Positions 199 through 42,105 of a stretch of 64,000 nucleotides of DNA are shown one piece after another. A model generated the notes under the pieces. The model was not told the DNA's origin. It saw only the letters and a list, made by a program, of their open reading frames with translations, and searched no databases. The stretch covers positions 124,001-188,000 of the IMG/VR virus record IMGVR_UViG_3300005537_000001; one strand, written 5' to 3'. The position numbers were made by a program, and so were the translations under genes. Each line of letters starts with the position of its first letter. Position 1 is the stretch's first letter.

Positions 199-272
199 TC
201 GCCCGTAGCTGAGTGGTTTAGCGAGGAACTCTAAATTCCGGTACGTGGGTTCGATTCCCATCGGGCGATCCA
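199..272 (+). tRNA. Amber suppressor tRNA (anticodon CUA), probably Gln-type body
   Basis: Acceptor TCGCCCG/CGGGCGA, D arm GCT/AGC, anticodon loop CT-CTA-AA in GGAA/TTCC stem, GGTTCGATTCC T arm, T73 then CCA; U1-A72 and U73 as in this phage's tRNA-Gln(CTG). Confidence 0.9.
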
Positions 273-2681: not shown

Positions 2682-2759
2682 GTCTCCGAGGCGAAGTCAG
2701 GTAAACGCAGCGACCTCTAAAATCGTTAAGAGTGGGTTCGAAGCCCACCGGAGACGCCA
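2682..2759 (+). tRNA. Second amber suppressor tRNA (anticodon CUA), amino-acid identity unclear
   Basis: Acceptor GTCTCCG/CGGAGAC, D arm GCG/CGC, loop CT-CTA-AA, T arm GTGGG-TTCGAAG-CCCAC, G73 then CCA. Confidence 0.85.
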
Positions 2760-16328: not shown

Positions 16329-16416
16329 CAGGAATTAGCTCATTGGAGATACGAGAGAGCACTCGGTTGCCGAAAGCACCGAGAGGTTGTTGGTTCGATT
16401 CCAACATTCCTGACCA
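16329..16416 (+). ncRNA. tRNA-Pro-like body with anticodon loop replaced by an extended CGAAA-capped hairpin
   Basis: CAGGAAT/ATTCCTG-A-CCA; CTCGG-T-TGC-CGAAA-GCA-CCGAG. Confidence 0.65.
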
Positions 16417-16501: not shown

Positions 16502-16572
16502 TCCCTTGTAGCTTAAACAAAGCCCGGCATTTACGGCCGGAGATGGAGGTGAAAGACCTTCCCAGGGAGCCA
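16502..16572 (+). ncRNA. tRNA-like RNA with loop ATTTACG (nominal UUA anticodon, non-canonical)
   Basis: TCCCTTG/CCAGGGA-G-CCA; CCGGC-ATTTACG-GCCGG; T arm GGAGG-TGAAAGA-CCTTC. Confidence 0.6.
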
Positions 16573-16577
16573 AATAT

Positions 16578-16648
16578 TCCCTGGTAGTTTAACTACTAGA
16601 ATAGCGCGTATACGCGTGGTGGAGGTGAAAGACCTTCCCAGGGAGCCA
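16578..16648 (+). ncRNA. tRNA-like RNA with 4-nt anticodon loop; 3' half identical to 16502-16572
   Basis: TCCCTGG/CCAGGGA-G-CCA; GCGCG-TATA-CGCGT. Confidence 0.6.
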
Positions 16649-16654
16649 AATTTT

Positions 16655-16730
16655 GGGATCGTAGCTCAGAGGCGAGAGCAGGGCCCTTTTAAGGCCAAGG
16701 TCGAGATTTCGAAATTCTCCGGTCCTACCA
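16655..16730 (+). tRNA. tRNA-Lys(TTT)
   Basis: GGCC-CT TTT AA-GGCC; CCA. Confidence 0.9.
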
Positions 16731-16737
16731 AACAAAT

Positions 16738-16863
16738 GGTGATGTAGTGTAATGGCAGCACGCGAAAACATCGATCGCAAATTTTGTTGTGACCCAACCG
16801 TCAGTGATTGGTTATCCACTCATAAAGGCGAAGATTACGTTCGAATCGTAACAATCACCACCA
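16738..16863 (+). ncRNA. tRNA/Y-RNA hybrid (circularly permuted YrlA-like) ending in CCA
   Basis: GGTGAT/ATCACC-A-CCA, D arm, TTACG-TTCGAAT-CGTAA T arm; anticodon arm replaced by ATCGATCGC-AAAT-TTTGTTG...CAACCGTCA-GTGATTGGT-TATC. Confidence 0.65.
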
Positions 16864-18426: not shown

Positions 18427-19218
18427 ATGTTCTATTATCTCTACAAAATCACGAATAACGTGAATGGAAAAATCTACGTCGGGTATCATAAAACCTCTAA
18501 CATAGATGATGGTTACATGGGATCCGGGAAGATTATCAAGCACGCAATTAAAAAGCACGGCTTAGATAACTTTACAAAAGTCATACTTGAGTATTTTGAG
18601 AATGCAGAAGCTATGTATGCGCGAGAGAAAGAAATTGTAGATGATGATTTTCTAGCTCGACCCGATGTCTATAACCTAAGACGCGGAGGAAACGGTGGGT
18701 TTGATCATATCAATAAAAATCGAACCGCCGAGGAATGGTCTCGATTAGGAAAATTGAGACGAGCAAAATCTAAAGGAAACACAGGTAAAATATTTAGTGT
18801 TGAATGGAAAGCTAATATTAGCAAATCGTTAAAAGGTAGTGATAATTCAGCAGCAGTTGAAGCGGCCAGATCCAAAAAATCTAACCATAAACGAAAACTT
18901 ACGATGAGAAAACGTAAGCATCAACAAGGTGAAAATAATTCCAATTTTGGAAAAATTTGGATAACTGATGGAATAAAAGCTGTCAAAATTAGAAAAGATC
19001 AGATACATGAATATCTTGAACGTGGATATATGTTGGGTAGAACAATTAAAATTCCAAAAATAAAACACATTACTAAAGCTGAACTCTACAATGATATTCA
19101 ACCTAAATGCAGAAATCCAAAATGTAATAACAGCTTGTCGCTTATGCAATTTGTCAAAAATATCAAATCGTGTTGTAAAGCATGCGCTAATTCAACACGT
19201 TATTCGGGGATCGTCTAA
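18427..19218 (+). mobile_element. GIY-YIG homing endonuclease (Seg-like) inserted in the tRNA array
   Basis: YLYKITNNVNGKIYVG..GYMGSG..YNL; AT-rich; stop overlaps tRNA-Gln. Confidence 0.9.
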
Positions 19219-19285: not shown

Positions 19286-19379
19286 GCCGAGGTAGCTCAG
19301 AGCTGGTCAAAACCCAGCGCCGGTAGAGCGGGTGCCCAACAGCACCGCGTCGTTGGTTCGAATCCAACCCGAGGCGCCA
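19286..19379 (+). ncRNA. tRNA-like RNA: D-loop hairpin insert, 6-nt anticodon loop, GA/GA mismatches in acceptor stem
   Basis: GCCGAGG/CCGAGGC-G-CCA; GCTGG..CCAGC insert; GGTGC-CCAACA-GCACC. Confidence 0.65.
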
Positions 19380-19551: not shown

Positions 19552-19651
19552 GCCGAAGTAGCTTAGAGTGGTGCGCAAAATAAATCCACGTCGGTAGAGC
19601 GTCCACCCGGAAACGTGGAAGACGATGGTTCGAATCCATTCTGAGGCACCA
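19552..19651 (+). ncRNA. tRNA-like RNA paralogous to 19286-19379 (D-loop insert, 8-nt anticodon loop)
   Basis: GCCGAAG/CTGAGGC-A-CCA; GTGG..CCAC insert; TCCAC-CCGGAAAC-GTGGA. Confidence 0.65.
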
Positions 19652-22457: not shown

Positions 22458-23120
22458 ATGAAGCGCATTATAGAAATTAAATCTGCCGAAGGCGGCACAG
22501 ATAGCAAGCTCTTCGCGCAAGATCTTGCCAACGCATACGTAAAGTATCTCACCCGAGTCGGCTGACTCCACCGCCGCATCGATTCGCTGACAATCGAGGT
22601 TGATGGACAGGATCTCTCAGCGCTTCACCAAGAAGCTGGTGGTCATCGAATCCAGCGGGTTCCACCAACCGAACGTTCTGGTCGCACCCACACCTCTACC
22701 GTTACCGTCGCCATCATCAACCCGCAAGAAGCTAAGCTGATTGAGTTCAACGAACGTGACTTCAGGATAGAGTGGTACTCTGGTACCGGTTCTGGTGGAC
22801 AACACCGTAACAAGCACCAAAATTCTTGCCGAATATTTCATACCCCAACTGGGACGGTTGCCACCGCACAATGTAGGAGCCGAGAAAATTCCTTGAAGGA
22901 AGCGAAGGTAAATATCCTTGAACGTCTAAACGCTCAGCTCTCCGGAGCAGCCCATCAAGCACTATCAATGGATAGGAAAACTCAGATGGGTTCCGGAGAG
23001 CGGGGTGACAAGATCCGCACCTACCGCTTCCAAGACAATATCGTCAAGGATCACAACACCGGAAAGCAGGCGCAAACCGACAAGGTGATGGCTGGAAACT
23101 TTCAACTGCTTTGGAGATAA
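22458..23120 (+). CDS. RF1-type peptide chain release factor (lacking domain 1) with in-frame TGA at codon 36
   Basis: MKRIIEIKSAEGGTDSKLFAQDL..Y..RVG*LH...EAGGHRIQRVPPTE.SGRTHTS...GSGGQHRNK...GSGERGDKIRTY; PxT and GGQ motifs; TGA 22563-22565. Confidence 0.9.
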
Positions 23121-25100: not shown

Positions 25101-25203
25101 AGAGATGTCGTATAATGGTATTACCCCGGTCTCCTAAGCACTTTCCTAAAGAGAGTTTTTAGGAAAACCGATGACGGGAGTTCGATTCTCTCCATCTCTG
25201 CCA
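25101..25203 (+). tRNA. tRNA-Trp-like gene with a 29-nt insertion in the anticodon loop
   Basis: AGAGATG/CATCTCT-G-CCA; removing 25135-25163 gives CCGGT-CT CCA AA-ACCGA. Confidence 0.7.
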
Positions 25204-28563: not shown

Positions 28564-29238
28564 ATGAAGGTTAACGAGCTTCTCGAAGCAAAGATCGATA
28601 AGCCATTCGGTAACGCAAACAGCAAGCCGATTTATCATCCAGAGACAGGCCATCTCCGCGGGTCAACGCGTGATTGGTTGACGCTCGGTGATGCAACTCT
28701 TGCCGACGTTCAAAAGGCGATACCAATCATCAAGCAATCTGATATTTTCAAGCAAGCTGAAAACATCGGGTTGAAATACGAGGGTAAGCCAACGCGCGAG
28801 CGCAATGGCTCACTGTACTTTGCTCGGCAGATGCCGCTCAAAAAGCTAAACATTAGCAAGGATAAGGACTCAATCATAAAGGCAGCTTTGAAGGCCTTGA
28901 AGGCTGGAGATCAATCTAAAGCTAGACAGATAGTAGATGCTGCCAGAATCGATGGTTTAGATTTCCCAGAATTTAAATCCATCGACAAAAGCCTCGGCGA
29001 CACCCCAGCTTCAAATTCATACTACATAGTTTATCCAAATGGTCAGGTTCGAGTATCATCAGATGGAGCGCATTATTACGCGCTTATCAAATCGCCAAAA
29101 CCAAGAATGGTTGTTGGTGATCCGGTAAAATCAATAGTGAAAACTTACGCGCAGGCGATCGAAAGAATGATCGACGTGTGGAAGAAATCAAGAGAGCGAA
29201 AAGAACCATACTATATGCGCGGTGCGCCTCGACCCTAA
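28564..29238 (+). CDS. Probable virion internal protein (paralog of 20543-21205)
   Basis: MKVNELLEA. Confidence 0.75.
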   Translation: MKVNELLEAKIDKPFGNANSKPIYHPETGHLRGSTRDWLTLGDATLADVQKAIPIIKQSDIFKQAENIGLKYEGKPTRERNGSLYFARQMPLKKLNISKDKDSIIKAALKALKAGDQSKARQIVDAARIDGLDFPEFKSIDKSLGDTPASNSYYIVYPNGQVRVSSDGAHYYALIKSPKPRMVVGDPVKSIVKTYAQAIERMIDVWKKSRERKEPYYMRGAPRP

Positions 29239-29279
29239 TCACGGGTTCAATAAATAAGTAATTCTTCAAGGAGATTAAC

Positions 29280-29576
29280 ATGTTCAACTTCGTTACACCA
29301 GTTCTTTCATTTATGTTTGACAGCCTATTCAACGCACACACCTACGCCGGTATATTTCTCGGCGCCGTCTTTTCCCCACTCTGGGTAAAGATTTGGGCAT
29401 TCGTCTCAGCAAAAGTTGTTAAGATGTTCCCAAAGGCAGCTCCAGTTATAGCTGAAGTAGACAACGTAGCGTCAGATGTCGTTAAGGTAATTACTCCAGT
29501 AGCCAATCAAGTTGACGCTGTAGTAACACCGGCCAAGGTAATTCCAGCTGGTCCAGTTACAAAGGCATCTAAGTAA
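29280..29576 (+). CDS. Small membrane protein
   Basis: Hydrophobic N-half; AGGAG SD. Confidence 0.65.
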   Translation: MFNFVTPVLSFMFDSLFNAHTYAGIFLGAVFSPLWVKIWAFVSAKVVKMFPKAAPVIAEVDNVASDVVKVITPVANQVDAVVTPAKVIPAGPVTKASK

Positions 29577-29598
29577 GGAGTCCCTTACAAATCAAATC

Positions 29599-29628
29599 AA
29601 GGGACTCCAACGTTGGAGTCCCTTTTTA
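29599..29628 (+). terminator. Intrinsic terminator with an upstream competing strand
   Basis: AAGGGACTCCAA-CG-TTGGAGTCCCTT-TTT. Confidence 0.8.
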
Positions 29629-29902
29629 GTTTCTTGAAGATGAACGACGCAATCGTAAATAGCTAGTGACCTGATTGGTTTACTTATGCAGGTCCGCATG
29701 ATATAATCACACCAGATCCAGGATCTGGCGAGGAGACGAAAATGTCGGTCACACTGGATCTGATTAATGGAATAAGCGTGGGTTTGGAATATCTTTCCGC
29801 TAATGAAGAACACGAGAATACCATCATCGTGGATCTCTTGGTAATAAGACTACTGATACAGTGGTAAGATGATTAGAATGGTATGACATAAGGAATAATG
29901 GC

Positions 29903-30475
29903 ATGGCACTAATATTGCAGCTTGACAACACCGGTCAACCTAACAAGTGGATAACGTGGCAAACGGCCGTAACCTATCACGCGAAGAATCTGGTAGCTTG
30001 GGAACTCGGTGAGGTAGAAACGGTGGTGCGCGGTGGAACCAGCGCGCAAACTGGCGAACGCACCGTAGTCGTTACATCCTCAATCATGGCCGTCAAGGGC
30101 AGCGTTGGCAAGCGAAAGCACCGTCCGCCAGCTCTAAACAACCGTGAGCTATTCCGGCGCGATCGCCATCTCTGCGGATACTGTGGCAACCAGTTCAGCG
30201 ACTCCAAGCTGACGCGCGACCACATCATTCCGAAGGCCCAAGATGGTAAGGACACGTGGATGAATGTTGTGTCGTGCTGCGCGCGCTGTAACCAGCGCAA
30301 GGACAACAAAACTCCGCAAGAAGCCGGCATGCAACTGCTCTTCACGCCGTACGTTCCATCACGCGCGGAGCATTTGATTCTCGCGAATCGAAACATCCTC
30401 GCTGATCAAATGGAATTTTTGCTATCCTTCGTTGATGAAAAGTCACGTCTTCGAGCGCAGCTAACCAAGCAATGA
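29903..30475 (+). CDS. HNH endonuclease (McrA-like)
   Basis: RDRHLCGYCG..TRDHIIP..WMNVVSCCARCNQRK. Confidence 0.9.
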   Translation: MALILQLDNTGQPNKWITWQTAVTYHAKNLVAWELGEVETVVRGGTSAQTGERTVVVTSSIMAVKGSVGKRKHRPPALNNRELFRRDRHLCGYCGNQFSDSKLTRDHIIPKAQDGKDTWMNVVSCCARCNQRKDNKTPQEAGMQLLFTPYVPSRAEHLILANRNILADQMEFLLSFVDEKSRLRAQLTKQ

Positions 30476-30622
30476 TCTGTCCGGATTGTAAGGTGGAGAT
30501 GCGGTTGAGTCAATCTTACCGTGAGCCAGCTCCAGTAACCTTTTATTGGGTCTGCGAGAATGGTAATTGCTCAAATGAAATCCTCTACCACCTAGACGGC
30601 AGTCCATCAACATCCGCTCTTT

Positions 30623-31186
30623 TTGGAGAAAATTGTGAGCGATAAAAAACTAGAACCTAAGCTTGAACGAATGTTGATGTTTCAAACGGTCGGTAAGCTA
30701 GTAATAGGTGCTGTCGCATCAGCTTCATCGGTCTATCTATGCGGTAGCACGCTCGGGTGGACCATTATGTCAATGGTTGCAGCTGGAATTTTAACTTGGT
30801 TTCTGATGAAGCTCGGAATTATCATGGTCACCATATTTTTCCAGCTTGTATTTTACCGCGGCGACTACGCTGCCCTTCTTGCCGACGCGAACAAGGCGCA
30901 AGAAATTCTCAACAGGCGCTCTGACGTAATCATCAAGCGCGTTGGTGGGTCAATACCGACCGCGGAAATTATCAAAACCGATGAAAAATCGATTGGCTCA
31001 TTCGATGGAACAGCATTTTACGAGTGGGTTGAGCTACTCGGTAAGGATGGTAAAAACTATCGCTTCAACTACTATGGCACCGACGCTTCTCGCGCGCCCA
31101 AGAGGAGACCAATCCCAGAAGATTGCATCTACATCGCGCCTGGAATACTTTATCAGGTTGCTCCTGAGATAAATACCTCCGCATAA
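30623..31186 (+). CDS. Membrane protein
   Basis: Two hydrophobic segments. Confidence 0.65.
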   Translation: MEKIVSDKKLEPKLERMLMFQTVGKLVIGAVASASSVYLCGSTLGWTIMSMVAAGILTWFLMKLGIIMVTIFFQLVFYRGDYAALLADANKAQEILNRRSDVIIKRVGGSIPTAEIIKTDEKSIGSFDGTAFYEWVELLGKDGKNYRFNYYGTDASRAPKRRPIPEDCIYIAPGILYQVAPEINTSA

Positions 31187-31241
31187 TTTCGGAAAATAAA
31201 TTGTACTTTTGCCCTACGGCATGTTACAATTTCCGAGTTAA

Positions 31242-31321
31242 AGAGTTCAACGGAACCGGAGTTAATTGGTTATCTTGCATTACCCGATTAACAATCATTT
31301 GTTTCACTCCATTTGAATTCT
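31242..31321 (+). ncRNA. Mini Y-RNA-like RNA upstream of Ro60
   Basis: GAGTTCAA/TTGAATTC; GGAAC-C-GG/TT-GTTTC bulged helix; GTTAATTGG/CCGATTAAC; early promoter 31201-31230. Confidence 0.65.
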
Positions 31322-31328
31322 CGCAGTT

Positions 31329-31718
31329 AAAATTTCTTTGCTCAACGTGATCACCAAAGTTCCTCCACCGGAGCAGCTTGGTTAACAATCATGTACGTTA
31401 GTGGATGGGTGTTGTTACCCCTGCAGGGTTCAGCACGCGCAAACGGTGTCAAGGCTGTTCCACCAAATTCTTGAATGGTTGCTGGTTAGAGAAAATCAGA
31501 TAGTGCTGACTGACCGTCAGATAGTTGCTGGTTAGAATGACCAGATAGATTACCGCATAGTCGAATCAAGCGGTGTAGGTAGGCACAATGGGAATAGTCC
31601 CATCGTGTAATTTGTTCGAAACCTTCGGGTTAGACTCATGATTTTCGGATCATGTAAACTATCGAAGTTCCCAACTGCAACATTTGTTGGGGAATTTTGT
31701 TGATCACGTTGAAATTTT
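31329..31718 (+). ncRNA. Giant (~390 nt) Y-RNA-like structured RNA immediately upstream of Ro60
   Basis: TCAACGTGATCA.CAAAGTTCCTC / GGGGAATTTTG.TGATCACGTTGA long-range stem; CAC-C-GGA/TTTGTT helix; GCAG(C)TTGG/CCAACTGC; internal UUCG hairpins. Confidence 0.65.
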
Positions 31719-31758
31719 GCCGTCGCTAGCAACGATAGCCGCTATAGGAGATCATATC

Positions 31759-33393
31759 ATGGCTAAGAAGAACTCAATCTACATCAACACGATGTCTACT
31801 AATCCACGTACGACCGTTACACCACAGACTCAGGCATTGCCTGGTCGTGAAGCCGAAATGGTTGCAAACTCCGCGGGTGGAGTTACGTTCCAACTTGACG
31901 TTTGGGGACAGCTCGATCGCTTCCTAATCCTCGGATCAGATACACCAACGTATTACGCTTCAGCGAAGACGCTCACGAAGCAAAACGGTGCGAACGTTCT
32001 CAAGGCTATCAAGCTTGATGGTACAAAGACCGTTAACCGCATCACCGAAATCTCTCTTGGCGGTCGCGCTCCGAAGAATGATCCTGCCGTGTTCGCCTTG
32101 GCGCTCTGCGCCATTCATGGTGATGAAAACACCGTTAAGGCCGCCTACGCGGCTCTACCGAAGGTTTGCCGAATCGGCACTCACCTGTTTCAGTTCGTCG
32201 CGGCGCTCGATGAAATTGGCAAGTGGAACGCAGCCGCAAAGCGCGGTGTTGCAGCGTGGTACACCGGCCGAGGTGTCGACAAGCTGGCAGTTCAGCTCTT
32301 GAAGTACCAGTCTCGCGATGGCTGGGCGCACCGCGACGTCCTACGGCTCGCGCACGTCAAGCCGGCTAATGATGTTCAGTCTGCCCTGTTCCGCTACGCG
32401 GTTAAGGGCGCCGAGGGACTTGAACCGAACACTGAGGTTCCTCAGCTGCTCGTTGACTTCGAGAAGCTCAAGACCGCCGACGCGAAAACAACGATCAAGT
32501 TGATCGAGTCTAACGACGACATCACTTGGGAAATGATCTCGACCGAGCATCTCAAGGATCCAAAGGTCATGGCCGCGATGATCCCAAACATGGGGCTGAC
32601 CGCTCTTATTCGCAAGCTTGGTCAGCTGACCAGCATCGGCGTCATCAAGCCGTTGTCTTCGGACATGTCGGTCGTTCTCAATAAGCTTACCGACACTGAG
32701 GCCCTAAAGGGTGGTCGCGTTCACCCACTTCAGCTCCTAATCGCGCTGAAGCAATATTCTGTTGGACATGGCTTGAAGGGTAGCTTGGTGTGGAAGCCGG
32801 TGGCGCAGGTTGTTGACGCGTTGAATGATTCGTTCTACGAGGCGTTCAACTTCATCCCAACGACCAATGAGGGTTACCTGTTTGGTCTTGACATCTCCGG
32901 TTCAATGTTCGGTGGTGAGGTATCCGGCGCGCCGGGTATGTATCCAGCCGAAGTATCAGCGGTTATGGCTCTTGCCGTCGCGAAGCGTGAGAACAACTAT
33001 GAGATGTTCGGATTCGACAAGACTCCGAAGCCTTTGAAGATTTCTCCGTCGATGCGCCTGGATACTGTTATTGAGGCGATGAAGAATCTCCGCTGGTCAG
33101 GTGGTGGTACTGACTGCTCGCTGCCGATGCTGTACGCGCTTGATCGTGGATACAGTGGCATATCTGCCTTCGTTACTTTCACCGATAATGAAACATGGGC
33201 CGGCAAAATGCAGCCAGTAGAAGCATTGGCTCGTTACCGTAACAAATACAACCCAGCTGCAAAAATGATTGTCTGCGGTATGACTGGAACCCCATTCACT
33301 ATCGCTGATCCAAAAGATCCGGGGTCACTTGATCTTGTTGGATTTGACAGCTCTTGCCCTCAGTTGATACAGAGCTTTGCCAGCGGGAAATAA
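31759..33393 (+). CDS. rsr: Ro60/TROVE-domain RNA-binding protein (Rsr)
   Basis: NSAGG..F, LDRFLILG, KYQSRDGWAHRDVLRLAH, vWA DISGSM, GGTDC, TDNETW, LDLVGFD. Confidence 0.95.
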   Translation: MAKKNSIYINTMSTNPRTTVTPQTQALPGREAEMVANSAGGVTFQLDVWGQLDRFLILGSDTPTYYASAKTLTKQNGANVLKAIKLDGTKTVNRITEISLGGRAPKNDPAVFALALCAIHGDENTVKAAYAALPKVCRIGTHLFQFVAALDEIGKWNAAAKRGVAAWYTGRGVDKLAVQLLKYQSRDGWAHRDVLRLAHVKPANDVQSALFRYAVKGAEGLEPNTEVPQLLVDFEKLKTADAKTTIKLIESNDDITWEMISTEHLKDPKVMAAMIPNMGLTALIRKLGQLTSIGVIKPLSSDMSVVLNKLTDTEALKGGRVHPLQLLIALKQYSVGHGLKGSLVWKPVAQVVDALNDSFYEAFNFIPTTNEGYLFGLDISGSMFGGEVSGAPGMYPAEVSAVMALAVAKRENNYEMFGFDKTPKPLKISPSMRLDTVIEAMKNLRWSGGGTDCSLPMLYALDRGYSGISAFVTFTDNETWAGKMQPVEALARYRNKYNPAAKMIVCGMTGTPFTIADPKDPGSLDLVGFDSSCPQLIQSFASGK

Positions 33394-33456
33394 GTTCCTC
33401 TAACGTAATGCTGCAGCTCGAGCCTTTAGAATTATTGGCTCGAGCTGGCAGCATCT

Positions 33457-34122
33457 TTAGATTGCATATATATGCCCGACTATGTAAGGTGGGACACTAT
33501 TTAGGAATCCGTAAACTACGGAATATTGATGATCGATCTGATAAGGATCATTTGAATATCCGTATCCTCCTCTCTTTTCAAAATTTTCTAGTAGGTGTAG
33601 TGGTTGTCGATTAGTAACTTTGTCTACTTGATATTGATATTTTTGAAAATCGCTCTTGCCCTCTAAACCAGCGTAAACCCCAAAACGCGTAATGGCAGTG
33701 TTGATAGCGGCGCGAACGAATAGATCATTGCCATTTTCATCAATCGTGTTTCTCTTTGTTTCAACTGTTTTTGCTATCCCTTTGTAAGAGCCATCTGGTA
33801 ATCGTCGTGATGAAGCAACGGCCAACATATTCTTCTGAAACCCGGTTAACCCATTTTCATCTTTAACACTCATAGTGGCTCTTCGTTTATCCATAAGCAG
33901 TTGTCTTCGTGTTTTACCATCAACAGCTTCATTCATGGTTATATTCGCCTTTGCTGCGCCTAGTTTTCCAGTACCGCGTAATATTTTTGTTTTTCCAGCT
34001 TTACGAGCTGCGATAATAGACTTTCTTAATCCTGTAACTGGATCTATTTCTTGCGCTCTTCTGAGCGCAGCCAATGAATAATTTCTTCGTTTGATTTCTG
34101 GATCAACGGGAATGTATGCCAT
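33457..34122 (-). pseudogene. HNH homing endonuclease frameshifted at an (AT)n run
   Basis: YQIDH...GHI; deleting one AT at about 33466-33473 restores CNLKMLPARANNSKG..CSITLEEL. Confidence 0.65.
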
Positions 34123-34486
34123 TTGGTCATTTTCTCCTGTGCGATATCCTGTTATTTATTGGAAAATCATGGTTATGACAGATATTGAGTTAGCTTATAA
34201 ATAGATAATCTCAAAATGGGAGGTTTCATGTTTAAGATGCTATCTAACCTAGCAAAGGCGGCAGTGTCTGTAGCTGTAACGCCAGTGATGCTAGTTGCGG
34301 ATGTAGTGACTATTCCGGATTCTGCCATGAACAACACGGCACCATTCAAGCGCACGGCAGACATGCTCCAAAATGCAGGTGAGTGCATCGATAGAGCCGT
34401 AACACCGGAATAATCTGATTCGATTGTACTTCTAGGTGGGGGTGAGTTAAGATAACTCATCCCTCTTGCCTTGATAAGAAAATAAC

Positions 34487-35236
34487 ATGATCAATCACCC
34501 GTATTATCCCAATGGAAATGTTTACCTCTCCGGGGGTATGCAATTTGCCGCAGATCTTGGAGCTGGTTGGAGAGAAGTTTGCTCAAAGCGACTTCGAATT
34601 CTCGGGTTTAATCCAATCGACATCGCCGCCCTTGACATCGCGTATTCTGACGCTCATGGGCACCTCTACCGAAATCTGGTGTCTAGCGAGGAACTTCTAC
34701 TTCGCAAGTCAAACATTCGAAAGCACTTCATCGACGCGGACATCAAGCTTGTTCGAAATGATTCCGACGCGGTAATCATTCTGTACGACGAAAGCGTTCG
34801 TAAGGGAGCTGGAACAACCAGTGAAGTGCATGAAGCGTTTATGCAGGACATTCCTGTCTATCTCATCAACACGTACAAGGACATCGCCGAAGTCCCTGGC
34901 TGGATGCAAGCTGAAACTACGATCATCTTCAATGAATTTGAAGAGCTATATTCATATCTTGGTGGTTTGCCAAAGGGCATCCTCAAGCGCGATGAGTATG
35001 GAAACCGCCGCTCCGGCAACTATTACCTTTGTTCGCTCTGCGGTAATGTAGAGGAAAAGAAGAAGACTCACTACGTGTCCTTGGTTCGCCCATCGTACTG
35101 CAAGAAGTGCGTGGAAACGGTAAAGTATACCCACGAAGCTAACTTTGATCGCTATATGTTCTTCAAAGCTTCTCTCGAACGCGCTGAGCCACATCACGCG
35201 GTCGATTACATGATCCCACAAAACCAGAGCAAATAA
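34487..35236 (+). CDS. Nucleoside 2-deoxyribosyltransferase-like protein with Zn finger
   Basis: VYLSGGM..WRE, D..V..SD.VI, GAGTTSE; CxxC..CxxC. Confidence 0.7.
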   Translation: MINHPYYPNGNVYLSGGMQFAADLGAGWREVCSKRLRILGFNPIDIAALDIAYSDAHGHLYRNLVSSEELLLRKSNIRKHFIDADIKLVRNDSDAVIILYDESVRKGAGTTSEVHEAFMQDIPVYLINTYKDIAEVPGWMQAETTIIFNEFEELYSYLGGLPKGILKRDEYGNRRSGNYYLCSLCGNVEEKKKTHYVSLVRPSYCKKCVETVKYTHEANFDRYMFFKASLERAEPHHAVDYMIPQNQSK

Positions 35237-35548
35237 ATGCCATACATAACCCAAGAACAGCGCAGGGAGTTAGACGCTGAAATTCTCTCCCTAGCTGAGA
35301 AGATTAAGAACAATCACAACCATACTCATGCTCGCAATGGTGAGATGAATTACACCATCTCCCGCTTGATTCGTGAAGTTTACGGCCCAAAGCGTATTCC
35401 AGATCCAGGTGCTCAAGGTACGTGGCGCTATGCCGACATCAACGACGTTGTTGGTATGCTGGCGTGCGCCAACATGGAATTCTACCGCAAGGTTGCTGCA
35501 CCATACGAGGACATCAAGGAAGAGCAGAATGGTATCGTCTATGACTGA
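35237..35548 (+). CDS. Conserved phage protein often found near nucleotide-metabolism genes
   Basis: MPYI...GEMNY...EFYRK..APYED.K..NG. Confidence 0.65.
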   Translation: MPYITQEQRRELDAEILSLAEKIKNNHNHTHARNGEMNYTISRLIREVYGPKRIPDPGAQGTWRYADINDVVGMLACANMEFYRKVAAPYEDIKEEQNGIVYD

Positions 35549-36086
35549 AACTCACGATCACGTATGGGTTGAAATGAGTTGGCAGGAAGCTTATCCAGCT
35601 ATACACGGTATCAAGTGTTCAGTTCCGGGTTGCAACGTTGAGCGCTTAGGTTGGTTTGCCAGGGCTGATCGCACCGTAAGTTCAGACGCTTCCGAATTCG
35701 CAGGAGATACCGGCTGATGGATGAATTCACCTATACGGATGATAACGCGTATTTTCTACCAACTGGTGATATAGTTCCAAAGGTGTGCCCGTATTGCAAG
35801 TGTGAAGTAGCAAAGCCAAAATCTGCTGAAGATTTTCTAGACACCCACAGTGATTGTTTTCCATGCTAGACGAATTTGTAAAGCGGGTTAGAATTTGTGA
35901 CGCGTTAGAGCGGGCACGTAGGAATATTACCATCACGCATTTTGCCGATACATCTTTTGATGGTGAGTATGGTGATTCCTTTATTCCAATTTGCACCGGG
36001 CGGCCGCTGAAGTTTCAGAACGCCAGTTACATTAGAAGCAAGGTAAATTGCAAGCGCTGTCTCGCAAAAATAAGATGTGGATTTTG

Positions 36087-36614
36087 ATGACCGACATCTA
36101 CATAGTTGCAGCCGTAGCCCTTAACGGCGTCATCGGCAGCTCGAGCACCAACAAGATGCCATGGCATCTTCCGCAAGATCTAGAAAACTTCAAGGCCGTT
36201 ACCATGGGTAAAACCGTAGTGATGGGCCGGAAAACATTTGAGAGCATCGGTGGAGCTCTTCCTGGTCGGCGCAATGTGGTCATTACCAGCAGCCAGCGCT
36301 TTCGTTGGGCAAACAAGGTAACAACCTACGAGAGCGTATCAGAAGCTTTCAAGAAAGAAAAGCACGATTTATACGTTATCGGTGGCCAGAAAATTTTTGA
36401 AGAAGCTATGACGCTTATCCCCAAGAAATTTTTCATAACAGTTGTACTTGCTAAGCCAGAAGGTGATATAATTTTTCCTAGCGACGGTTATAGCTTTCTC
36501 AGCCGCTTCTACATGCCGAAAAACAGCTTCATTCTCTATCACCAGCTTAACGAACCCAAGTGGATAGAAGAAAATGGATTCAAATACCAAATCAACGAAT
36601 ATGAACGAAATTAG
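36087..36614 (+). CDS. folA: Dihydrofolate reductase
   Basis: NGVIG..MPWHLPQDLENFK, MGRKTFESIG..LPGRRNVV, VIGG. Confidence 0.92.
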   Translation: MTDIYIVAAVALNGVIGSSSTNKMPWHLPQDLENFKAVTMGKTVVMGRKTFESIGGALPGRRNVVITSSQRFRWANKVTTYESVSEAFKKEKHDLYVIGGQKIFEEAMTLIPKKFFITVVLAKPEGDIIFPSDGYSFLSRFYMPKNSFILYHQLNEPKWIEENGFKYQINEYERN

Positions 36615-37420: not shown

Positions 37421-39379
37421 ATGAAATTGAGTTCAACCTTCACTTCATCTTTCGCAAGAAAGTTTGCATCCAACGCCGAGATGCCCATTCTGGATTATCT
37501 CGATCTCTGTAAAACCGATAAGATGGTGTATGCCAACGCGGCAGAACGAATTTTAGCTTCCATCGGTGAACCAACGGTAGTCGACACTTCAAGCGACCCT
37601 CGCCTATCACGCATTTTCAGCAACAAGAAAATACGTACCTACGAGGCGTTCAAGGAGTTTTACGGAGCTGAAGAAGCCATTGAGCGCATCGTCGCCTACT
37701 TTACGGCCTTCGCTCAGGGGCTAGAAGAATCAAAGCAGATCCTTTATCTCAAGGGACCGGTTGGTGGTGGTAAAAGTTCTTTGGTCGAGCGGCTTAAAGA
37801 ACTAATGCAGACATATCCGATTTATGTTTTGAAGGATCCTTCAGAGAAAAATGCGGAACTGCAGCTCTCTCCTCTGTTCGAAAGTCCGCTCGGCCTTTTT
37901 AACAAGCTTGAGCATGGTGAAGAGCTGGAAAAAGAGTATGGCATTTCTCCACGCTATCTCAACACGGTTTCTTCAGGCTGGGCGCAGCAGAAGCTCCAGG
38001 AATTCGGTGGTGATTGGACTAAATTCAGCGTTGTCAAGATTTATCCAAACAAGGATTCCCAGATTGGCATCATGAAGGTTGAGCCAGGCGACGAGAATAA
38101 TCAAGACGTTTCAGTTCTTATCGGCAAGACCGATATTCGCAAGCTGAAAACTTATCAGCAAAATCACTCATACAGCTACAGCTACTCCGGTGGTTTAAAC
38201 CGCACGACCCAGGGTTTCATGGATTTTGCCGAAATGTTCAAGGCGAACATTAAGACGCTAAATCCGCTCTTGATGGCGACGCAAGAACACAACTACAACG
38301 GTACCGAAAATATCCCAGCGATGCCGTACATCGGCATCATCTGCGCCCACTCAAACGAGGCAGAATGGTTCAAGTTCCGAAACGATAAGTCAAATGAGGC
38401 CTTCCTAGACCGCGTTTACATCGTCAACGTTCCATACTGTCTACGAGTTAGCGAGGAGCAGAAAATTTACGAGAAGATGCTCCGAGGTTCAAGCTTGAAG
38501 AATGAGGCGTGCGCCCCTGAAACCCTGAAGGCGCTGGCCGAGTTCATGGTCCTCACGCGCCTGCGTGAACCAGAAAACAGCACTATCTACGCCAAGATGA
38601 AGGTGTATGACGGTCAGAACGTGAAGGATACCATGCCGATGGCTAAGCCTTACGAGGAGTACCGCGAGGCTGGTGGTATCGATGAAGGTATGACCGGCTT
38701 GTCTACCCGCTTTGGCTTCAAGATTCTTTCAGCGACTTACAACCTACGTCCGGAAGAAATTCAGGCCAACCCAATCGACCTCATGTACGTTCTGGAACAA
38801 GCGCTAAAGCGCGAGCACCTGCCAAGCGAAGCTCAGGAACAGTACCTTGACTTCATCAAGTCGTGGGTGCAGCCGCGCTACTTCGAGTTTATCGACAAGG
38901 AACTTCGCATGGCGTACCTCGAGTCCTACAGCGAGTTTGGTCAGACGATGTTCGAGCGCTACTGCTTGTTTGCCGAATCATGGTGCGATGACGTTACCTG
39001 CCGCGACCCAGAAACTCACACGCTTTTGAACCGCGAGCACCTCAACACTAAGCTTGAAGAAGTAGAAAAGGCAGCTGGCATTCCAAACGCGAAGGATTTT
39101 CGCAACGACATCGTGCACTACGTTCTTCGCTACCGCTCGCGCAATGAAGGCAAGATGCCAAAATGGAATGAGTACGAAAAGATCAAGGTCGTCATCGAGA
39201 AGAAGATGTTCTCAGCTACTACCGAAATCATGCCAATCGTTTCATTCACACCAAAAGGTTCAGCTGAAGAGCAGAAGAAGCATAACGACTTTGTCGCTCG
39301 CATGAGAAGCAAAGGATATACTGACAGACAGATTCGCACGCTAGTAGATTGGTGGTGTAACAACCGGAAAGCCTCGTAG
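37421..39379 (+). CDS. yeaG: PrkA/YeaG AAA+ serine kinase family protein
   Basis: QILYLKGPVGGGKSS, EPGDENNQD, EMFKA, HSNE.EW, NEAFLDR. Confidence 0.95.
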   Translation: MKLSSTFTSSFARKFASNAEMPILDYLDLCKTDKMVYANAAERILASIGEPTVVDTSSDPRLSRIFSNKKIRTYEAFKEFYGAEEAIERIVAYFTAFAQGLEESKQILYLKGPVGGGKSSLVERLKELMQTYPIYVLKDPSEKNAELQLSPLFESPLGLFNKLEHGEELEKEYGISPRYLNTVSSGWAQQKLQEFGGDWTKFSVVKIYPNKDSQIGIMKVEPGDENNQDVSVLIGKTDIRKLKTYQQNHSYSYSYSGGLNRTTQGFMDFAEMFKANIKTLNPLLMATQEHNYNGTENIPAMPYIGIICAHSNEAEWFKFRNDKSNEAFLDRVYIVNVPYCLRVSEEQKIYEKMLRGSSLKNEACAPETLKALAEFMVLTRLREPENSTIYAKMKVYDGQNVKDTMPMAKPYEEYREAGGIDEGMTGLSTRFGFKILSATYNLRPEEIQANPIDLMYVLEQALKREHLPSEAQEQYLDFIKSWVQPRYFEFIDKELRMAYLESYSEFGQTMFERYCLFAESWCDDVTCRDPETHTLLNREHLNTKLEEVEKAAGIPNAKDFRNDIVHYVLRYRSRNEGKMPKWNEYEKIKVVIEKKMFSATTEIMPIVSFTPKGSAEEQKKHNDFVARMRSKGYTDRQIRTLVDWWCNNRKAS

Positions 39380-39392
39380 CCCAGGTTGACAG

Positions 39393-39947
39393 ATGTTAGG
39401 GCAATATTACTGCTACATATTTCGTGATCCCAAAACCGAGATTCCTAGATACGTTGGCAAGGGAGTGAATGATAGAGTTTGGACTCACATAGATTATCCA
39501 TCTAACACTCGCACTGATAGGATGCTAGTGAAGAGACATAGGGAAGGATACTCTTGTGTACCCGAAATTATCTACTGCAAGAATGAGGAACAGGCTTTCA
39601 GTTTAGAGATGTGGTTCATTTGGAAATATGGGCGTGAAGATCAAGGTCGAGGTACACTTTTCAATCTCACAGATGGTGGAGAAGGTTTGACAGGTATCTC
39701 AGAAGAAACTCGCCAGAAGATGTCAATAGCTAAAACTAGATATCTCACTGGTAGAAAACACGATGAAGCAAGACGCAAGAGACAAGGGCAGAGGATGAAG
39801 GGTATTCCGAATGTCGCAGCGAGCAAGAAGCTTCAAAAGCGTTGCACTGTAGATGGTGAGAATATCTATCCATCTGTTAGAGATTTAGTGGCAGCACTAG
39901 GTCATGGTAAAAATGGAGCACGATCTCCAAGTTTGAGGTTCATATGA
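39393..39947 (+). mobile_element. GIY-YIG homing endonuclease with NUMOD3-like motif
   Basis: YCYIFRDP..RYVGKG..R..H; NLTDGGEG..SEETRQKMS. Confidence 0.85.
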
Positions 39948-40104
39948 ATAATGAAGTAACTAAAACAGCGATTGCGGGTCTGGCCGCATCCATCAACCGC
40001 GTAGCGGAACAACTAGCCGTACAAAATAATCAGCAGGTTTTGCAGAACAATCTTCTAAGACGAATCGCTGACGCTCTTGATCAACAGAATTCAACGGTGC
40101 GCTG

Positions 40105-40428
40105 ATGGGCTACTCACATGAAGAATTAAGTGAAATTTGGTGGGCCTCTACAAAGCCCGCGCTGGCGCCATATGCGGATCATTACAAATTTGGAATCGAT
40201 GCGTGCGGGGCTTTGATAGAATGGGCAGCATATGGTAAGGCTGATTCAGATAATCCCGGCAACACAGCATGGGAAGTAGCGCACAAGATCGCCATTGCAG
40301 AGGGTGGAACAGACAATAAAAACAATCTTATAGCCCTTCAGTGGACGAATAATCGCAGACAGGGCACTCGCCCACTTCGAGTTTTCCTTGAAGCCGTGAG
40401 CGAGCATATGACTTGGAAACGCAAGTAG
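40105..40428 (+). CDS. HNH-like endonuclease
   Basis: WEVAH...GGTDNKNNLIALQWTNNR. Confidence 0.7.
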   Translation: MGYSHEELSEIWWASTKPALAPYADHYKFGIDACGALIEWAAYGKADSDNPGNTAWEVAHKIAIAEGGTDNKNNLIALQWTNNRRQGTRPLRVFLEAVSEHMTWKRK

Positions 40429-40686
40429 TGCGAATCAATATAAACCAACTTAACACAAACCCACAGGAAATTGAACCAAACGATTTGACAATTTCCGAAA
40501 CAGGGCCGTGGAGCGTGAGCGTTGGAAAGTCTGAGGCAGGTACCTTGAAGGTATGCCTTCAGTCGGATGATTTTCACCACGACGTCGCTTTGTACATCAC
40601 TGGAGATTTCTGCGATAATGACCAGCGAATCGAATATGCTCGACTTCTTGCCGATCGAATGAATCGTATGCCGAAGGAGTAAAGAC

Positions 40687-42105
40687 ATGTCTTTCATCCT
40701 CATCGATAGAAGAAAGGCGGGTAGGGGAAAATCATCTTCAAACCGTCAAAAGCTCATTAAGCGAATAAAGGGCTTCATCAAGGCATCTTCCCCGCAAAAT
40801 ATTGGCAAATTCGGGGTTTCTGGTCAGAACAACCCAGCCCCTGGGGCTGGTGGATCCAGCCCTGTTAAGGTTGCCGGCGCGGCTCTTGAGGAACCGCACT
40901 TTCACTATTCTAGGGATGGCAATCATACAGCAATTATCATTGGCAATCAAGAGTATGATCGCGGTGATGAAATAGAAATACCATCCGATGAAGGTAGCTC
41001 AAGTCGGGGTGGTCCCGGAGATGCCGGTGAAGACGATTTCATAGTCTCTGTCGCGCGCGACGAATTTTTGGATCTTTTCTTTGAGGATTGCGAGCTACCG
41101 AATCTAGTCAATGAGAAGTGGACTGAGAGGCTTGATAATAAAACCCAACAAGCTGGGTTTTCTACTATTGGTTCTCCGGCTCAGCTAAGCGTAATCCGCA
41201 CCTACAAGCAAGCTCTCGGACGCTCAAGCGCGATGGCAGCTTTGGTGGAGGATGAAAAGGAAGAGCTGCTAGAAGAGCTTGCGGCAATATTTGAAAATTT
41301 AACCGGCGCTAAGCATGGCACTCCTGAAGAACTACTCCGGGTGCTCAACATCCACATGACGATTAACCTAATGCAGGATGAAGTCGGTAAACGAATAGCT
41401 TCGATCCTATCCCGTCTCAAGGAGCTAGATGACGAGATTGATTTCCTGGATGGGTTCGATTCTTCCGATCTTCGCTACCGCAAGAAGGAAGCTAAACCTC
41501 TCAAGACGGTAGACGCCGTTCTCTTCATGCTCATGGACATTTCCGGCTCCATGGATGAAACAAAGAAGACGATAGCCCGTCGTTGGTTCGCGCTGTTCTA
41601 CGCGTTCATTCGCCGGCGCTATCCAAACACCGAGCTTGTGTTCATCGCTCACACCGATGAAGCGTTTGAAATGTCCGAAAATGATTTCTTCTCCACGCGG
41701 GTCAACGGTGGAACTACCGTATCTCCAGCGCTGAAGATGATTAATACCATAATCAAAGAGCGCTACGATCCGAATGAAGTCAACATCTACATATCCCACG
41801 CGTCAGATGGTGATAATTGGGATGAGGACAACAGCGTCGTCATCGATGAAATGATCGGTGAGGGCAACCTCATGAAGAAGATCCAACTGTTCAGCTACGT
41901 TGAAGTTGGTAAACCGATGGGAACCGGCTGGTTTAACGTTGGAGCTGGAATATCAGGAACTACTACGAGAGAAGATACCGGGTTGTGGGTAGCCTACGAT
42001 AAGGTTCGCGATGGGGTAGTTGATAAGAAGATGACCCTGTCGATAATCGAATCGGCGGATGAATGCTACCCAGTGTTTCAGAAAATTTTCAAGAAGAAAA
42101 AATAA
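40687..42105 (+). CDS. yeaH: YeaH/YhbH (vWA) protein
   Basis: LIDRR..KSSSNRQK, DLRYR, LMDISGSM, GGT.VS, HASDGDNW. Confidence 0.92.
   Translation: MSFILIDRRKAGRGKSSSNRQKLIKRIKGFIKASSPQNIGKFGVSGQNNPAPGAGGSSPVKVAGAALEEPHFHYSRDGNHTAIIIGNQEYDRGDEIEIPSDEGSSSRGGPGDAGEDDFIVSVARDEFLDLFFEDCELPNLVNEKWTERLDNKTQQAGFSTIGSPAQLSVIRTYKQALGRSSAMAALVEDEKEELLEELAAIFENLTGAKHGTPEELLRVLNIHMTINLMQDEVGKRIASILSRLKELDDEIDFLDGFDSSDLRYRKKEAKPLKTVDAVLFMLMDISGSMDETKKTIARRWFALFYAFIRRRYPNTELVFIAHTDEAFEMSENDFFSTRVNGGTTVSPALKMINTIIKERYDPNEVNIYISHASDGDNWDEDNSVVIDEMIGEGNLMKKIQLFSYVEVGKPMGTGWFNVGAGISGTTTREDTGLWVAYDKVRDGVVDKKMTLSIIESADECYPVFQKIFKKKK

What the first reader, a model, noticed from the sequence alone, without database searches (positions are those of the whole stretch)
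16738..16863. Circularly permuted Y RNA: a tRNA whose anticodon arm is a Ro60-binding stem
Established: bacterial YrlA RNAs have D, T and closed acceptor arms with the Ro-binding stem at the anticodon position. Here the acceptor has real ends and CCA, and the anticodon arm holds the same module as the RNAs beside rsr but in swapped order (3' strand stem-AA..TTTGTT first, then CAACCG..stem-GGTTATC). It could be processed by RNase P and possibly charged, tethering Ro60 to a tRNA-like body (inference).
Basis: partly seen in the sequence, partly recalled or inferred. Interest (0 to 1): 0.8.

Follow-up and report, generated by a model that had tools for sequence, protein, structure and literature searches.

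The report
tRNA carrying a Y-RNA stem insert
In a giant phage's tRNA gene cluster, one complete tRNA (with anticodon and CCA end) carries, as a side arm on its anticodon stem, the same RNA stem that sits next to the phage's Ro60 gene; it is a previously undescribed tRNA-shaped form of the Y RNAs that partner Ro60.

Summary
Window 16738-16863 (+) encodes a 126-nt RNA with acceptor stem, D arm, T arm, discriminator and encoded CCA, lying between ordinary tRNAs. It carries the two-helix module found just upstream of rsr (31252-31305), with the strand order swapped.

One correction: the module does not replace the anticodon arm. It is a 51-nt insert (16765-16815) in the 5' strand of the anticodon stem. 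A 5-bp stem with the 7-nt loop CUCAUAA (anticodon CAU) is still there.

A covariance model finds 19 distinct members in 11 phage or metagenome contigs, with 89% of cells paired and strong covariation. Removing the insert in silico gives ARAGORN tRNA calls in 18 of 19 (Met, Tyr with long variable arm, Asn, Val, Pro, Ala and others).

The module has a 4-6 bp lower helix, an invariant bulged C, usually a G.U pair, a 9-bp upper helix and UUAUC. It matches the Y RNA consensus layout (CCG, about 9 nt, GGUUAUC). Its 5' strand lies upstream of rsr in 17 of 80 phage rsr loci (0.1 expected).

The same module also occurs as a free hairpin and in YrlA order, so the circular-permutation idea is supported. 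Ro60 binding, processing and charging remain inferred. I rate it a new variant of the Y RNA / YrlA kind.

The parts
16738..16863 (+). Whole 126-nt tRNA / Y-RNA chimera, from the first acceptor base to the encoded CCA
   Evidence: Sequence. Model R1 scores 122 bits over 16738-16862. ARAGORN boundaries after excision give the same ends.
16738..16744 (+). Acceptor stem, 5' strand (GGUGAUG)
   Evidence: Pairs with 16852-16859. Acceptor columns are 93.9% paired, and 5 of 6 pairs show changes on both sides across 19 members.
16747..16761 (+). D arm (stem GUGU/GCAC, loop AAUGGCA with the GG dinucleotide)
   Evidence: The helix is 93.4% paired.
16763..16764 (+). Proximal two pairs of the anticodon stem, 5' side (tRNA positions 27-28); pair with 16829-16830
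   Evidence: Both pairs show changes on both sides and are 91.4% paired (helix 3).
16765..16815 (+). 51-nt inserted Y-RNA module: AAAAC linker, upper-helix Y strand, internal loop, lower helix closed by loop UGACC, bulged C, upper-helix X strand, UAU
   Evidence: On its own it folds (MFE = centroid) into the two-helix structure. Only deletions of this segment turn the RNA into an ARAGORN tRNA-Met call.
16770..16778 (+). Upper helix (helix 2), Y strand AUCGAUCGC; pairs with 16804-16812 (GUGAUUGGU), 9 bp
   Evidence: 95.9% paired; 5 of 9 pairs change on both sides (helix 4).
16785..16800 (+). Lower helix (helix 1): UGUUG / CAAC, loop UGACC, bulged C at 16799, then G16800.U16785. This is the Ro60-site look-alike.
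   Evidence: 4-6 bp in all 19 members, bulged C invariant, then U.G in 15, C-G in 1 and A.G in 3; 15 distinct helix sequences. Layout compared with the Rfam Y_RNA consensus.
16804..16815 (+). Upper-helix X strand plus conserved UAU; with C16816 this reads GGUUAUC
   Evidence: AUUGGUUAUC is invariant in the pattern-found members and AUGGUUAU in the CM-found ones, with a compensating change in the partner strand.
16816..16828 (+). Distal anticodon stem (CCA/AGG with an A.A mismatch) and 7-nt loop CUCAUAA; anticodon CAU at 16821-16823
   Evidence: ARAGORN calls tRNA-Met(CAU) after excision. Loop position 33 is U in 17 of 18 members and position 37 is A in 16 of 18.
16835..16851 (+). T arm (UUACG, loop UUCGAAU, CGUAA)
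   Evidence: GGUUCGA.UCC is nearly invariant and the stem covaries.
16852..16863 (+). Acceptor 3' strand with one bulged nucleotide (CAAUCACC), discriminator A, CCA
   Evidence: The same one-nt bulge occurs in the closest homologues from L007, L288 and L231.
31252..31305 (+). Free-standing Y-RNA hairpin 380 nt upstream of rsr: the same module with open lower helix (GGAAC[C]GG / UUGUUUC) and closed upper helix (GUUAAUUGG / CCGAUUAAC)
   Evidence: The MFE fold shows both helices.
31684..33393 (+). rsr (Ro60 orthologue, 569 aa)
   Evidence: Pfam TROVE plus vWA_Ro60. PDB matches: 2NVO at 4e-105 and 1YVP at 1e-102.

Best explanation
16738-16863 encodes a Y RNA built on a complete, unpermuted tRNA.

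Shown:
- The RNA has every tRNA element: acceptor stem, D arm, T arm, a 5-bp anticodon stem with loop CUCAUAA, discriminator and CCA.
- A 51-nt hairpin is inserted in the 5' strand of the anticodon stem between positions 28 and 29, giving a three-way junction.
- The hairpin is the Y-RNA stem module of this phage clade. It has a lower helix with an invariant bulged C followed by G.U, an internal loop, a 9-bp upper helix ending in GG, and UUAUC.
- The same module lies upstream of rsr in this and many related phages.
- In relatives it occurs in YrlA order, so the candidate and those YrlA-type RNAs are circular permutations of one architecture.

Inferred:
- The RNA is cut out of the tRNA-array transcript by the normal tRNA end-processing enzymes.
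- Its lower helix binds the phage Ro60 (Rsr).
- The tRNA body acts as the stabilising or effector-recruiting domain, as proposed for YrlA (for example tethering Rsr to host PNPase or to a tRNA-binding protein).
- Retention of anticodon-loop features and of a Tyr-type long variable arm suggests that a tRNA-recognising partner still reads the body. That partner could be a synthetase, a modification enzyme or an anticodon nuclease.
For: - Structure: 19 distinct members are 89% paired against 31-47% for slid partners, with a covariation score of 0.555 against at most 0.135.
- Lower helix: statistics.
- tRNA identity: the unmodified RNA gets no ARAGORN call. After one contiguous excision, 18 of 19 are called, and the window RNA is called tRNA-Met(CAU) only for 51-nt deletions starting at nt 27-29 out of 1208 constructs.
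- The Tyr-type members have the module, a GUA hairpin and a long variable arm together.
- Y-RNA identity: Rfam consensus lines for Y_RNA and the nematode sbRNA show GGUCCG, about 9 nt, then GGGUUAU(C), with the same helix/bulge layout.
- rsr linkage: the X-strand motif lies upstream of rsr on the same strand in 17 of 80 rsr loci, against 0.1 expected, including the window and L018/L228 in YrlA order.
- Weak Rfam YrlA hits next to rsr in L005 and L011 carry GGUUAYC at the same junction.
- Six contigs with embedded chimeras also encode Rsr.
- Rsr is full length.
- Precedent: M. smegmatis YrlA is cut by RNase P and receives CCA (PMC4201824).
Against: - There are no expression, end-mapping or binding data.
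- Rfam YrlA and Y_RNA models do not hit the candidate.
- The module has AACCG, not the published GNCGAA / GGUCCGA motif.
- Its lower helix is only 4 bp and is closed by a 5-nt loop, not open-ended as in all Y RNAs with mapped Ro60 binding.
- The whole-RNA MFE (-30 kcal/mol) differs from the proposed fold (-15.9 kcal/mol), so the structure rests on comparative evidence.
- Co-occurrence with rsr is confounded by shared ancestry (one clade of roughly 340-370 kb phages).
- Well-kept anticodon loops are also what an intron-bearing functional tRNA would show.
Confidence: 0.6

Rival explanations
1. Intron-like insert. The module is excised from the precursor and the halves are rejoined, giving an ordinary 75-nt tRNA-Met(CAU) for translation. 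It could also release a Y-RNA hairpin.
For: - In-silico removal of exactly one contiguous segment restores a callable tRNA in 18 of 19 members, with mostly canonical anticodon loops and varied anticodons.
- The proximal plus distal stem pairs sum to 5 in nearly all members although the insertion point slides from 27/28 to 31/32 (read from the alignment).
Against: - At 51 nt it is too short for a group I or II intron, and no intron or ribozyme family hit overlaps the insert (16765-16815).
- The junction is a three-way junction, not a bulge-helix-bulge (both single-stranded linkers lie at the same end of helix 2).
- No RtcB or other RNA ligase was found among the 30 window ORFs scanned.
- What is conserved is the Y-RNA stem, which splicing would not need.
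- YrlA-order relatives with closed acceptors keep the same anticodon-like hairpin although they cannot decode.
- Ordinary copies of tRNA-Met and tRNA-Tyr exist in the same arrays.
Confidence: 0.15
2. The module is the anticodon arm, and the small hairpin after UUAUC is a variable arm (the 'V' stem-loop of Chen et al. 2014), so there is no anticodon.
For: - Chen et al. describe a fourth stem-loop upstream of the T arm in many YrlAs and call it V.
- Five deletion constructs are called by ARAGORN with the hairpin as a long variable arm.
Against: - The two pairs that enclose both the module and the hairpin covary (helix 3).
- The enclosed stem totals 5 bp with a 7-nt loop, U33 and A37 in most members.
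- Three members have this hairpin plus a separate 14-15-nt variable arm of tRNA-Tyr type.
- Helix 2 starts 5-7 nt after position 26, unlike an anticodon stem.
Confidence: 0.1
3. Selfish or decaying element. A mobile hairpin landed in tRNA genes and the carriers are pseudogenes or neutral passengers without function.
For: - The module occurs in several tRNA bodies and several contexts.
- A few members have degenerate anticodon loops: 8-nt loops, C33, and one with no ARAGORN call.
Against: - Compensatory changes keep all tRNA helices and both module helices across 19 diverged members.
- CCA is encoded in nearly all.
- No target-site duplications or terminal repeats were seen in the sequences read.
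- The module is tightly linked to rsr.
Confidence: 0.05
4. An active decoding tRNA that keeps the side arm while being charged and used on the ribosome.
For: - Identity elements are kept: CAU; GUA plus a long variable arm; discriminator A; CCA.
Against: - From general knowledge of ribosome structure, a 51-nt arm projecting from pairs 28/29 of the anticodon stem should clash in the A, P and E sites.
- There are A31.A39 or U.C mismatches and an acceptor bulge in the CAU subgroup.
Confidence: 0.05

Closest known systems
YrlA (Rfam RF02553), the bacterial and phage tRNA-like Y RNAs of Chen et al. 2014 and Wang et al. 2018
   Same: - tRNA-like D and T arms joined to a Ro60-binding stem that leaves the body at the anticodon-stem position.
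- Linked to rsr.
- The GGUUAYC junction and UAAAC linker are shared with weak Rfam YrlA hits beside rsr in L005 and L011.
- M. smegmatis YrlA even gains an open acceptor with CCA after RNase P cleavage.
   Different: - YrlA has its ends in the Ro stem and a closed acceptor. Salmonella YrlA has no CCA and no anticodon loop.
- The candidate has a genomically open acceptor with encoded CCA, a closed Ro-type helix and a full anticodon stem-loop.
- It lies in a tRNA array 15 kb from rsr and gets no Rfam YrlA hit.
Metazoan Y RNA (RF00019) and nematode sbRNA (RF01656)
   Same: - Lower helix with a bulged C after ..CC, then G paired to U.
- Internal loop, then an upper helix ending in GG followed by unpaired UUAU(C).
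- The CCG to GGUUAUC spacing is about the same.
   Different: - The lower helix is 4-6 bp and loop-closed instead of 8 bp with free ends and an oligo-U tail.
- The motif is AACCG, not GGUCCGA.
- The module is embedded in a tRNA.
D. radiodurans Yrn1
   Same: It is a Y RNA with tRNA-like parts in a different order from YrlA, showing that this RNA class tolerates permutation. A Yrn1-like order of the same module lies just upstream of the window in the same contig.
   Different: Yrn1 has no complete tRNA, no CCA end and a 6-nt 'anticodon' loop.
Intron-containing tRNA genes (bacterial group I; archaeal bulge-helix-bulge)
   Same: A single contiguous insert in the anticodon arm whose removal restores a tRNA.
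   Different: The insert sits in the stem's 5' strand, is 51 nt, has no group I core and no bulge-helix-bulge, and its conserved features are those of a Y-RNA stem.
tmRNA and viral tRNA-like structures
   Same: tRNA mimics with an open CCA acceptor end joined to a non-tRNA functional domain.
   Different: Those lack a true anticodon arm and have no link to Ro60. Only a 12-bit tmRNA alignment was seen, on a homologue.

Membership tests
tRNA (RF00005) | Cloverleaf with 7-bp acceptor, D arm with GG, T arm with GUUCRANYC, discriminator plus CCA | tested here: met
   The acceptor has a one-nt bulge in the 3' strand.
tRNA (RF00005) | 5-bp anticodon stem with a 7-nt loop, U33 and purine 37 | tested here: met
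   The stem is split 2 + 3 by the insert. Loop CUCAUAA, with an A31.A39 mismatch.
tRNA (RF00005) | Recognised by tRNA detectors at normal length (about 73-93 nt) | tested here: not met
   No ARAGORN or Rfam tRNA call on the 126-nt sequence. It is called only after in-silico excision.
tRNA (RF00005) | Aminoacylation and decoding | not testable with these tools
   Needs biochemistry.
YrlA (RF02553) | Scores at or above the Rfam gathering threshold (69 bits) | tested here: not met
   No YrlA hit on 16738-16863 at E up to 5. No hit in 29000-36500 either.
YrlA (RF02553) | tRNA-like T and D arms attached to a Ro-binding stem at the anticodon-stem position | tested here: met
YrlA (RF02553) | Acceptor closed by a loop, no free CCA; RNA ends lie in the Ro stem | tested here: not met
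   Open acceptor with encoded CCA; the Ro-type helix is closed by loop UGACC.
YrlA (RF02553) | Encoded within about 4 kb of rsr on the same strand | tested here: not met
   It is on the same strand but 14.8 kb upstream of rsr, inside the tRNA array. A free copy of the module is 380 nt upstream of rsr.
YrlA (RF02553) | 5'-strand motif GNCGAAN0-1G | tested here: inconclusive
   The module has (C/G)AAC-C-G-N. This shares the C-G and the bulged-C geometry but not the GAA.
Y RNA in general | Bulged-C lower helix plus upper helix, as in RF00019 | tested here: met
Y RNA in general | Bound by Ro60/Rsr | not testable with these tools
   Only genomic linkage is available: 17 of 80 rsr loci carry the motif upstream, and six contigs carry both the chimera and rsr.
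Group I / bulge-helix-bulge tRNA introns | Catalytic core, or a bulge-helix-bulge motif at the exon-intron junctions | tested here: not met
   The only intron-family match was a chance-level group-II-D1D4-4 hit (19.3 bits vs 49 gathering, E 0.86) at 16543-16669, outside the candidate. The junction geometry read from the sequence is a three-way junction.

The most novel reading that the evidence does not exclude
The chimeras may be living intermediates in the origin of YrlA and may also be functionally dual. In this reading they are genuine, chargeable tRNAs (Met, Tyr, Asn and others) that carry Ro60 on a side arm. That would couple the Ro60/PNPase RNA-surveillance machine to synthetases, EF-Tu, the ribosome or anticodon nucleases. 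Tandem copies, or cleavage in the lower-helix loop, would yield YrlA-order RNAs directly, which is the dimeric-tRNA origin model proposed by Sim and Wolin as cited in bioRxiv 312249.
Probability: 0.15. Interest if true: 0.9.

Novelty: new variant of a known kind. Interest (0 to 1): 0.72.

Why it matters
Y RNAs and Ro60 are conserved from bacteria to humans, where Ro60 is a lupus and Sjogren autoantigen. How tRNA-like Y RNAs arose, and what their tRNA domain is for, are open questions.

A family of complete tRNAs carrying the Y-RNA stem sits beside permuted YrlA-order and hairpin-only versions in the same phages. This gives a concrete evolutionary series and a natural experiment. The same Ro-type module is presented with or without a free CCA end and with different anticodon identities.

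It also shows that standard tRNA and Rfam scans miss these genes. Phage tRNA arrays may therefore hide regulatory RNAs.

The literature searches I could run found no description of such chimeras.

Tried and rejected
- Rfam at gathering and E-value thresholds gave no YrlA or Y_RNA hit on the candidate or beside the window's rsr, and no YrlA hit on the YrlA-order homologue in L008.
- Whole-RNA MFE folding does not recover the module and is not better than shuffles (z = -1.0). The isolated module does fold as proposed.
- Megablast against deposited phages found nothing. Distant blastn found only ordinary tRNA similarity.
The three-part pattern was specific in IMG/VR. That gave three new members from metagenomes and none from the genome subset returned, so absence from cellular genomes is not shown.
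- ARAGORN intron mode did not find the correct anticodon.
- Rotating YrlA-order RNAs and excising the module gave the predicted anticodon as the top call only for L005. It was messy for the others, because thousands of constructs were tried.
- Group I, bulge-helix-bulge and known small-ribozyme explanations were rejected (no Rfam hits, wrong geometry).
- The 513-aa ORF next to the odd tRNA at 25101 is ferritin-like, not Ro60.
- No RNA ligase was found among the 30 ORFs scanned.

Full report
**Context.** The window is part of a 368-kb IMG/VR phage contig. Positions about 15.9-21.9 kb hold an array of more than 20 tRNA genes on the + strand, most with encoded CCA. A full-length Ro60 orthologue (rsr) lies at 31684-33393. 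It has TROVE and vWA_Ro60 domains and matches 2NVO at 4e-105 and 1YVP at 1e-102. About 500 nt of non-coding sequence precede it.

**Observation.** 16738-16863 reads as a tRNA frame. It has acceptor GGUGAU(G), a D arm, a T arm with loop UUCGAAU, discriminator A and CCA. The flanking spacers are of the same AAACAAAU type as those of its neighbours.

- Neither ARAGORN nor Rfam (tRNA, YrlA, Y_RNA) calls it.
- Between the D and T arms it carries UUUGUUG, then CAACCG...AUUGGUUAUC.
- The RNA 380 nt upstream of rsr carries GAACCG...AUUGGUUAUC, then UUUGUUUC.

**Relatives.** An exact 23-mer, then structured patterns, then a covariance model (R1) recovered 19 distinct full-length members in 11 viral or metagenome contigs. 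Several of these contigs are 340-376 kb. The window RNA scores 122 bits and is the only strong hit in the window.

On the model-fitted alignment:

- 89% of cells pair, against 31-47% when partners are slid by 1-3 columns.
- The covariation score is 0.555, against at most 0.135 for the slid controls.
- 23 of 34 pairs show changes on both sides.
- The alignment is fitted to the model, so these numbers lean towards the structure. However, the acceptor and T stems of the closest homologue (L007/L008) are entirely different in sequence yet still paired.

**Corrected anatomy.** After the module the RNA continues CCA-CUCAUAA-AGG-CG.

- The CG pairs with the CG that follows position 26.
- The anticodon stem is therefore C27-G43, G28-C42, then the insert, then C29-G41, C30-G40 and A31.A39. 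The loop is a canonical 7 nt (U33, A37, anticodon CAU).
- The insert is RNA nt 28-78, which is window 16765-16815.

*In-silico test.* Of 1208 constructs deleting 44-59 nt anywhere, only 8 give an ARAGORN call, and all 8 start at nt 25-29. The three 51-nt deletions give a 75-nt tRNA-Met(CAU).

*Across the family.* One contiguous excision gives a tRNA call in 18 of 19 members. The calls are CAU six times, GUA three times, and GUU, UAC, UGG, GCU, UGC and GUC, plus a few with odd loops. U33 is present in 17 of 18 and A37 in 16 of 18.

*Anticodon arm, not variable arm.*

- The three GUA members also have a 14-15-nt variable arm, as bacterial tRNA-Tyr does. The small hairpin therefore cannot be the variable arm there.
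- The insertion point slides between 27/28 and 31/32, while the proximal plus distal pairs still total 5 in nearly all members (read).
- The two enclosing pairs covary (helix 3).

**The module.** It has the following parts:

- Lower helix: 4-6 bp ending in a G-C pair, an invariant bulged C, then G.U (15 of 19), G-C (1) or G.A (3). There are 15 different helix sequences, including a GUC/GAC double change.
- An asymmetric internal loop.
- Upper helix: 9 bp, 95.9% paired, with 5 pairs changed on both sides, including AUUGG/CGAU to AAUGG/CGUU.
- An unpaired UAU.

Isolated, the 51-nt insert folds into exactly this structure (MFE = centroid). The rsr-adjacent RNA and a free copy in L008 do the same in the permuted order.

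*Comparison with known Y RNAs.*

- The Rfam consensus lines for metazoan Y_RNA and nematode sbRNA show the same plan: GGUC-C-G, about 9 nt, then an upper-helix strand ending in GGG, then UUAU(C).
- Chen et al. 2014 identify GGUCCGA / GNCGAA as the Ro60-contacted 5' strand.
- The phage version (AAC-C-G) matches the geometry and the C-G, but not the whole motif.

**Link to rsr.** Among the 80 best IMG/VR rsr loci, 17 carry RACCG-N5-10-WUGGUUAYC. In every case it is upstream of rsr and on its strand, and 0.1 matches are expected from shuffles.

- In L018/L228 the module sits in YrlA order immediately 5' of rsr.
- Weak Rfam YrlA hits beside rsr in L005 (40.8 bits) and a mycobacteriophage (36.1 bits) have GGUUAYC at the same junction, followed by an anticodon-like hairpin.
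- Six contigs with embedded chimeras also encode Rsr.
- These genomes are related, so this is linkage and not independent replication.

**Topology.** One L008 tRNA array holds five copies of the module: two embedded, two in YrlA order and one plain hairpin, with one embedded and one YrlA-order copy only a few bases apart. Just upstream of the window, the same contig has the module with a D-like arm, an anticodon-like hairpin and a T arm between its strands, which is a Yrn1-like order. Published YrlAs have a closed acceptor, and Salmonella YrlA lacks both a CCA end and an anticodon loop. M. smegmatis YrlA acquires an open CCA acceptor only by RNase P cleavage.

**Mechanism.**

- Shown: the architecture, its conservation and the rsr linkage.
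- Inferred: maturation by tRNA-processing enzymes, Rsr binding through the lower helix, and a tether, stabiliser or decoy role for the tRNA body.

*Main rival.* The insert might be removed to give a working tRNA. I rate this lower for four reasons:

- There is no intron core and no bulge-helix-bulge.
- No RNA ligase was seen among the 30 ORFs scanned.
- The conserved features are those of a Y-RNA stem.
- Closed-acceptor relatives keep the same hairpin.

It cannot be excluded without RNA data.

**Novelty.** Full-text searches found YrlA, Yrn1 and phage Yrl RNAs but no tRNA with a Y-RNA stem in its anticodon stem. Two key reviews were not held. I classify the finding as a new variant of the Y RNA / YrlA kind.

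Noticed in passing
window 25101-25200 (+): A tRNA (Rfam 45 bits, missed by ARAGORN) with a 29-nt hairpin inserted at the 3' edge of its anticodon loop (CUCCUAA, then the insert, then ACCG). This is a different kind of insert from the Y module.
   Followed up: partly
window 19286-19376 and 19552-19648 (+): Two tRNAs with 17-20-nt hairpins inserted in the D loop. Both anticodon loops lack U33.
   Followed up: no
window 16329-16415, 16503-16575, 16580-16650 (+): More odd tRNA-like units in the array: one with a 12-nt anticodon loop, and two near-repeat units ending in the same 28-nt 3' part with CCA but without a normal T arm.
   Followed up: no
window 199-272 and 2682-2759 (+): Two tRNAs with anticodon CUA (amber-suppressor type; ARAGORN labels them Pyl).
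   Followed up: no
window 22458-23120 (+): A class-I release-factor-like ORF (GGQ and GGHRIQRVPPTERSGRTHTS motifs) interrupted by a single in-frame TGA at codon 36. This could be recoding or autoregulation.
   Followed up: partly
window 37421-43613 (+): A PrkA / DUF444 (YeaH-like) / SpoVR (YcgB-like) gene trio in a phage genome.
   Followed up: no
window ~31365-31460 (+): A second, degenerate module beside rsr (CCACCG...CUUGGUUAAC). Its upper-helix strand pairs with 31451-31460, but I found no clear lower helix.
   Followed up: partly
L173:4513-4640 (same contig, 4-14 kb upstream of the window): The same module with a D-like arm, an anticodon-like hairpin (loop CUUAGAC) and a T arm between its two strands. 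The module is in the acceptor position, a Yrn1-like order.
   Followed up: partly
L004:2883-2961: An RNA immediately upstream of another viral rsr matches the metazoan Y_RNA model (24.7 bits) and the nematode sbRNA model (27.8 bits), with GUCCGA and GGAUUAUC.
   Followed up: partly
window 18427-19218 (+): A GIY-YIG / NUMOD3 homing-endonuclease-like gene sits inside the tRNA array. An HNH endonuclease lies at 29903-30475.
   Followed up: no
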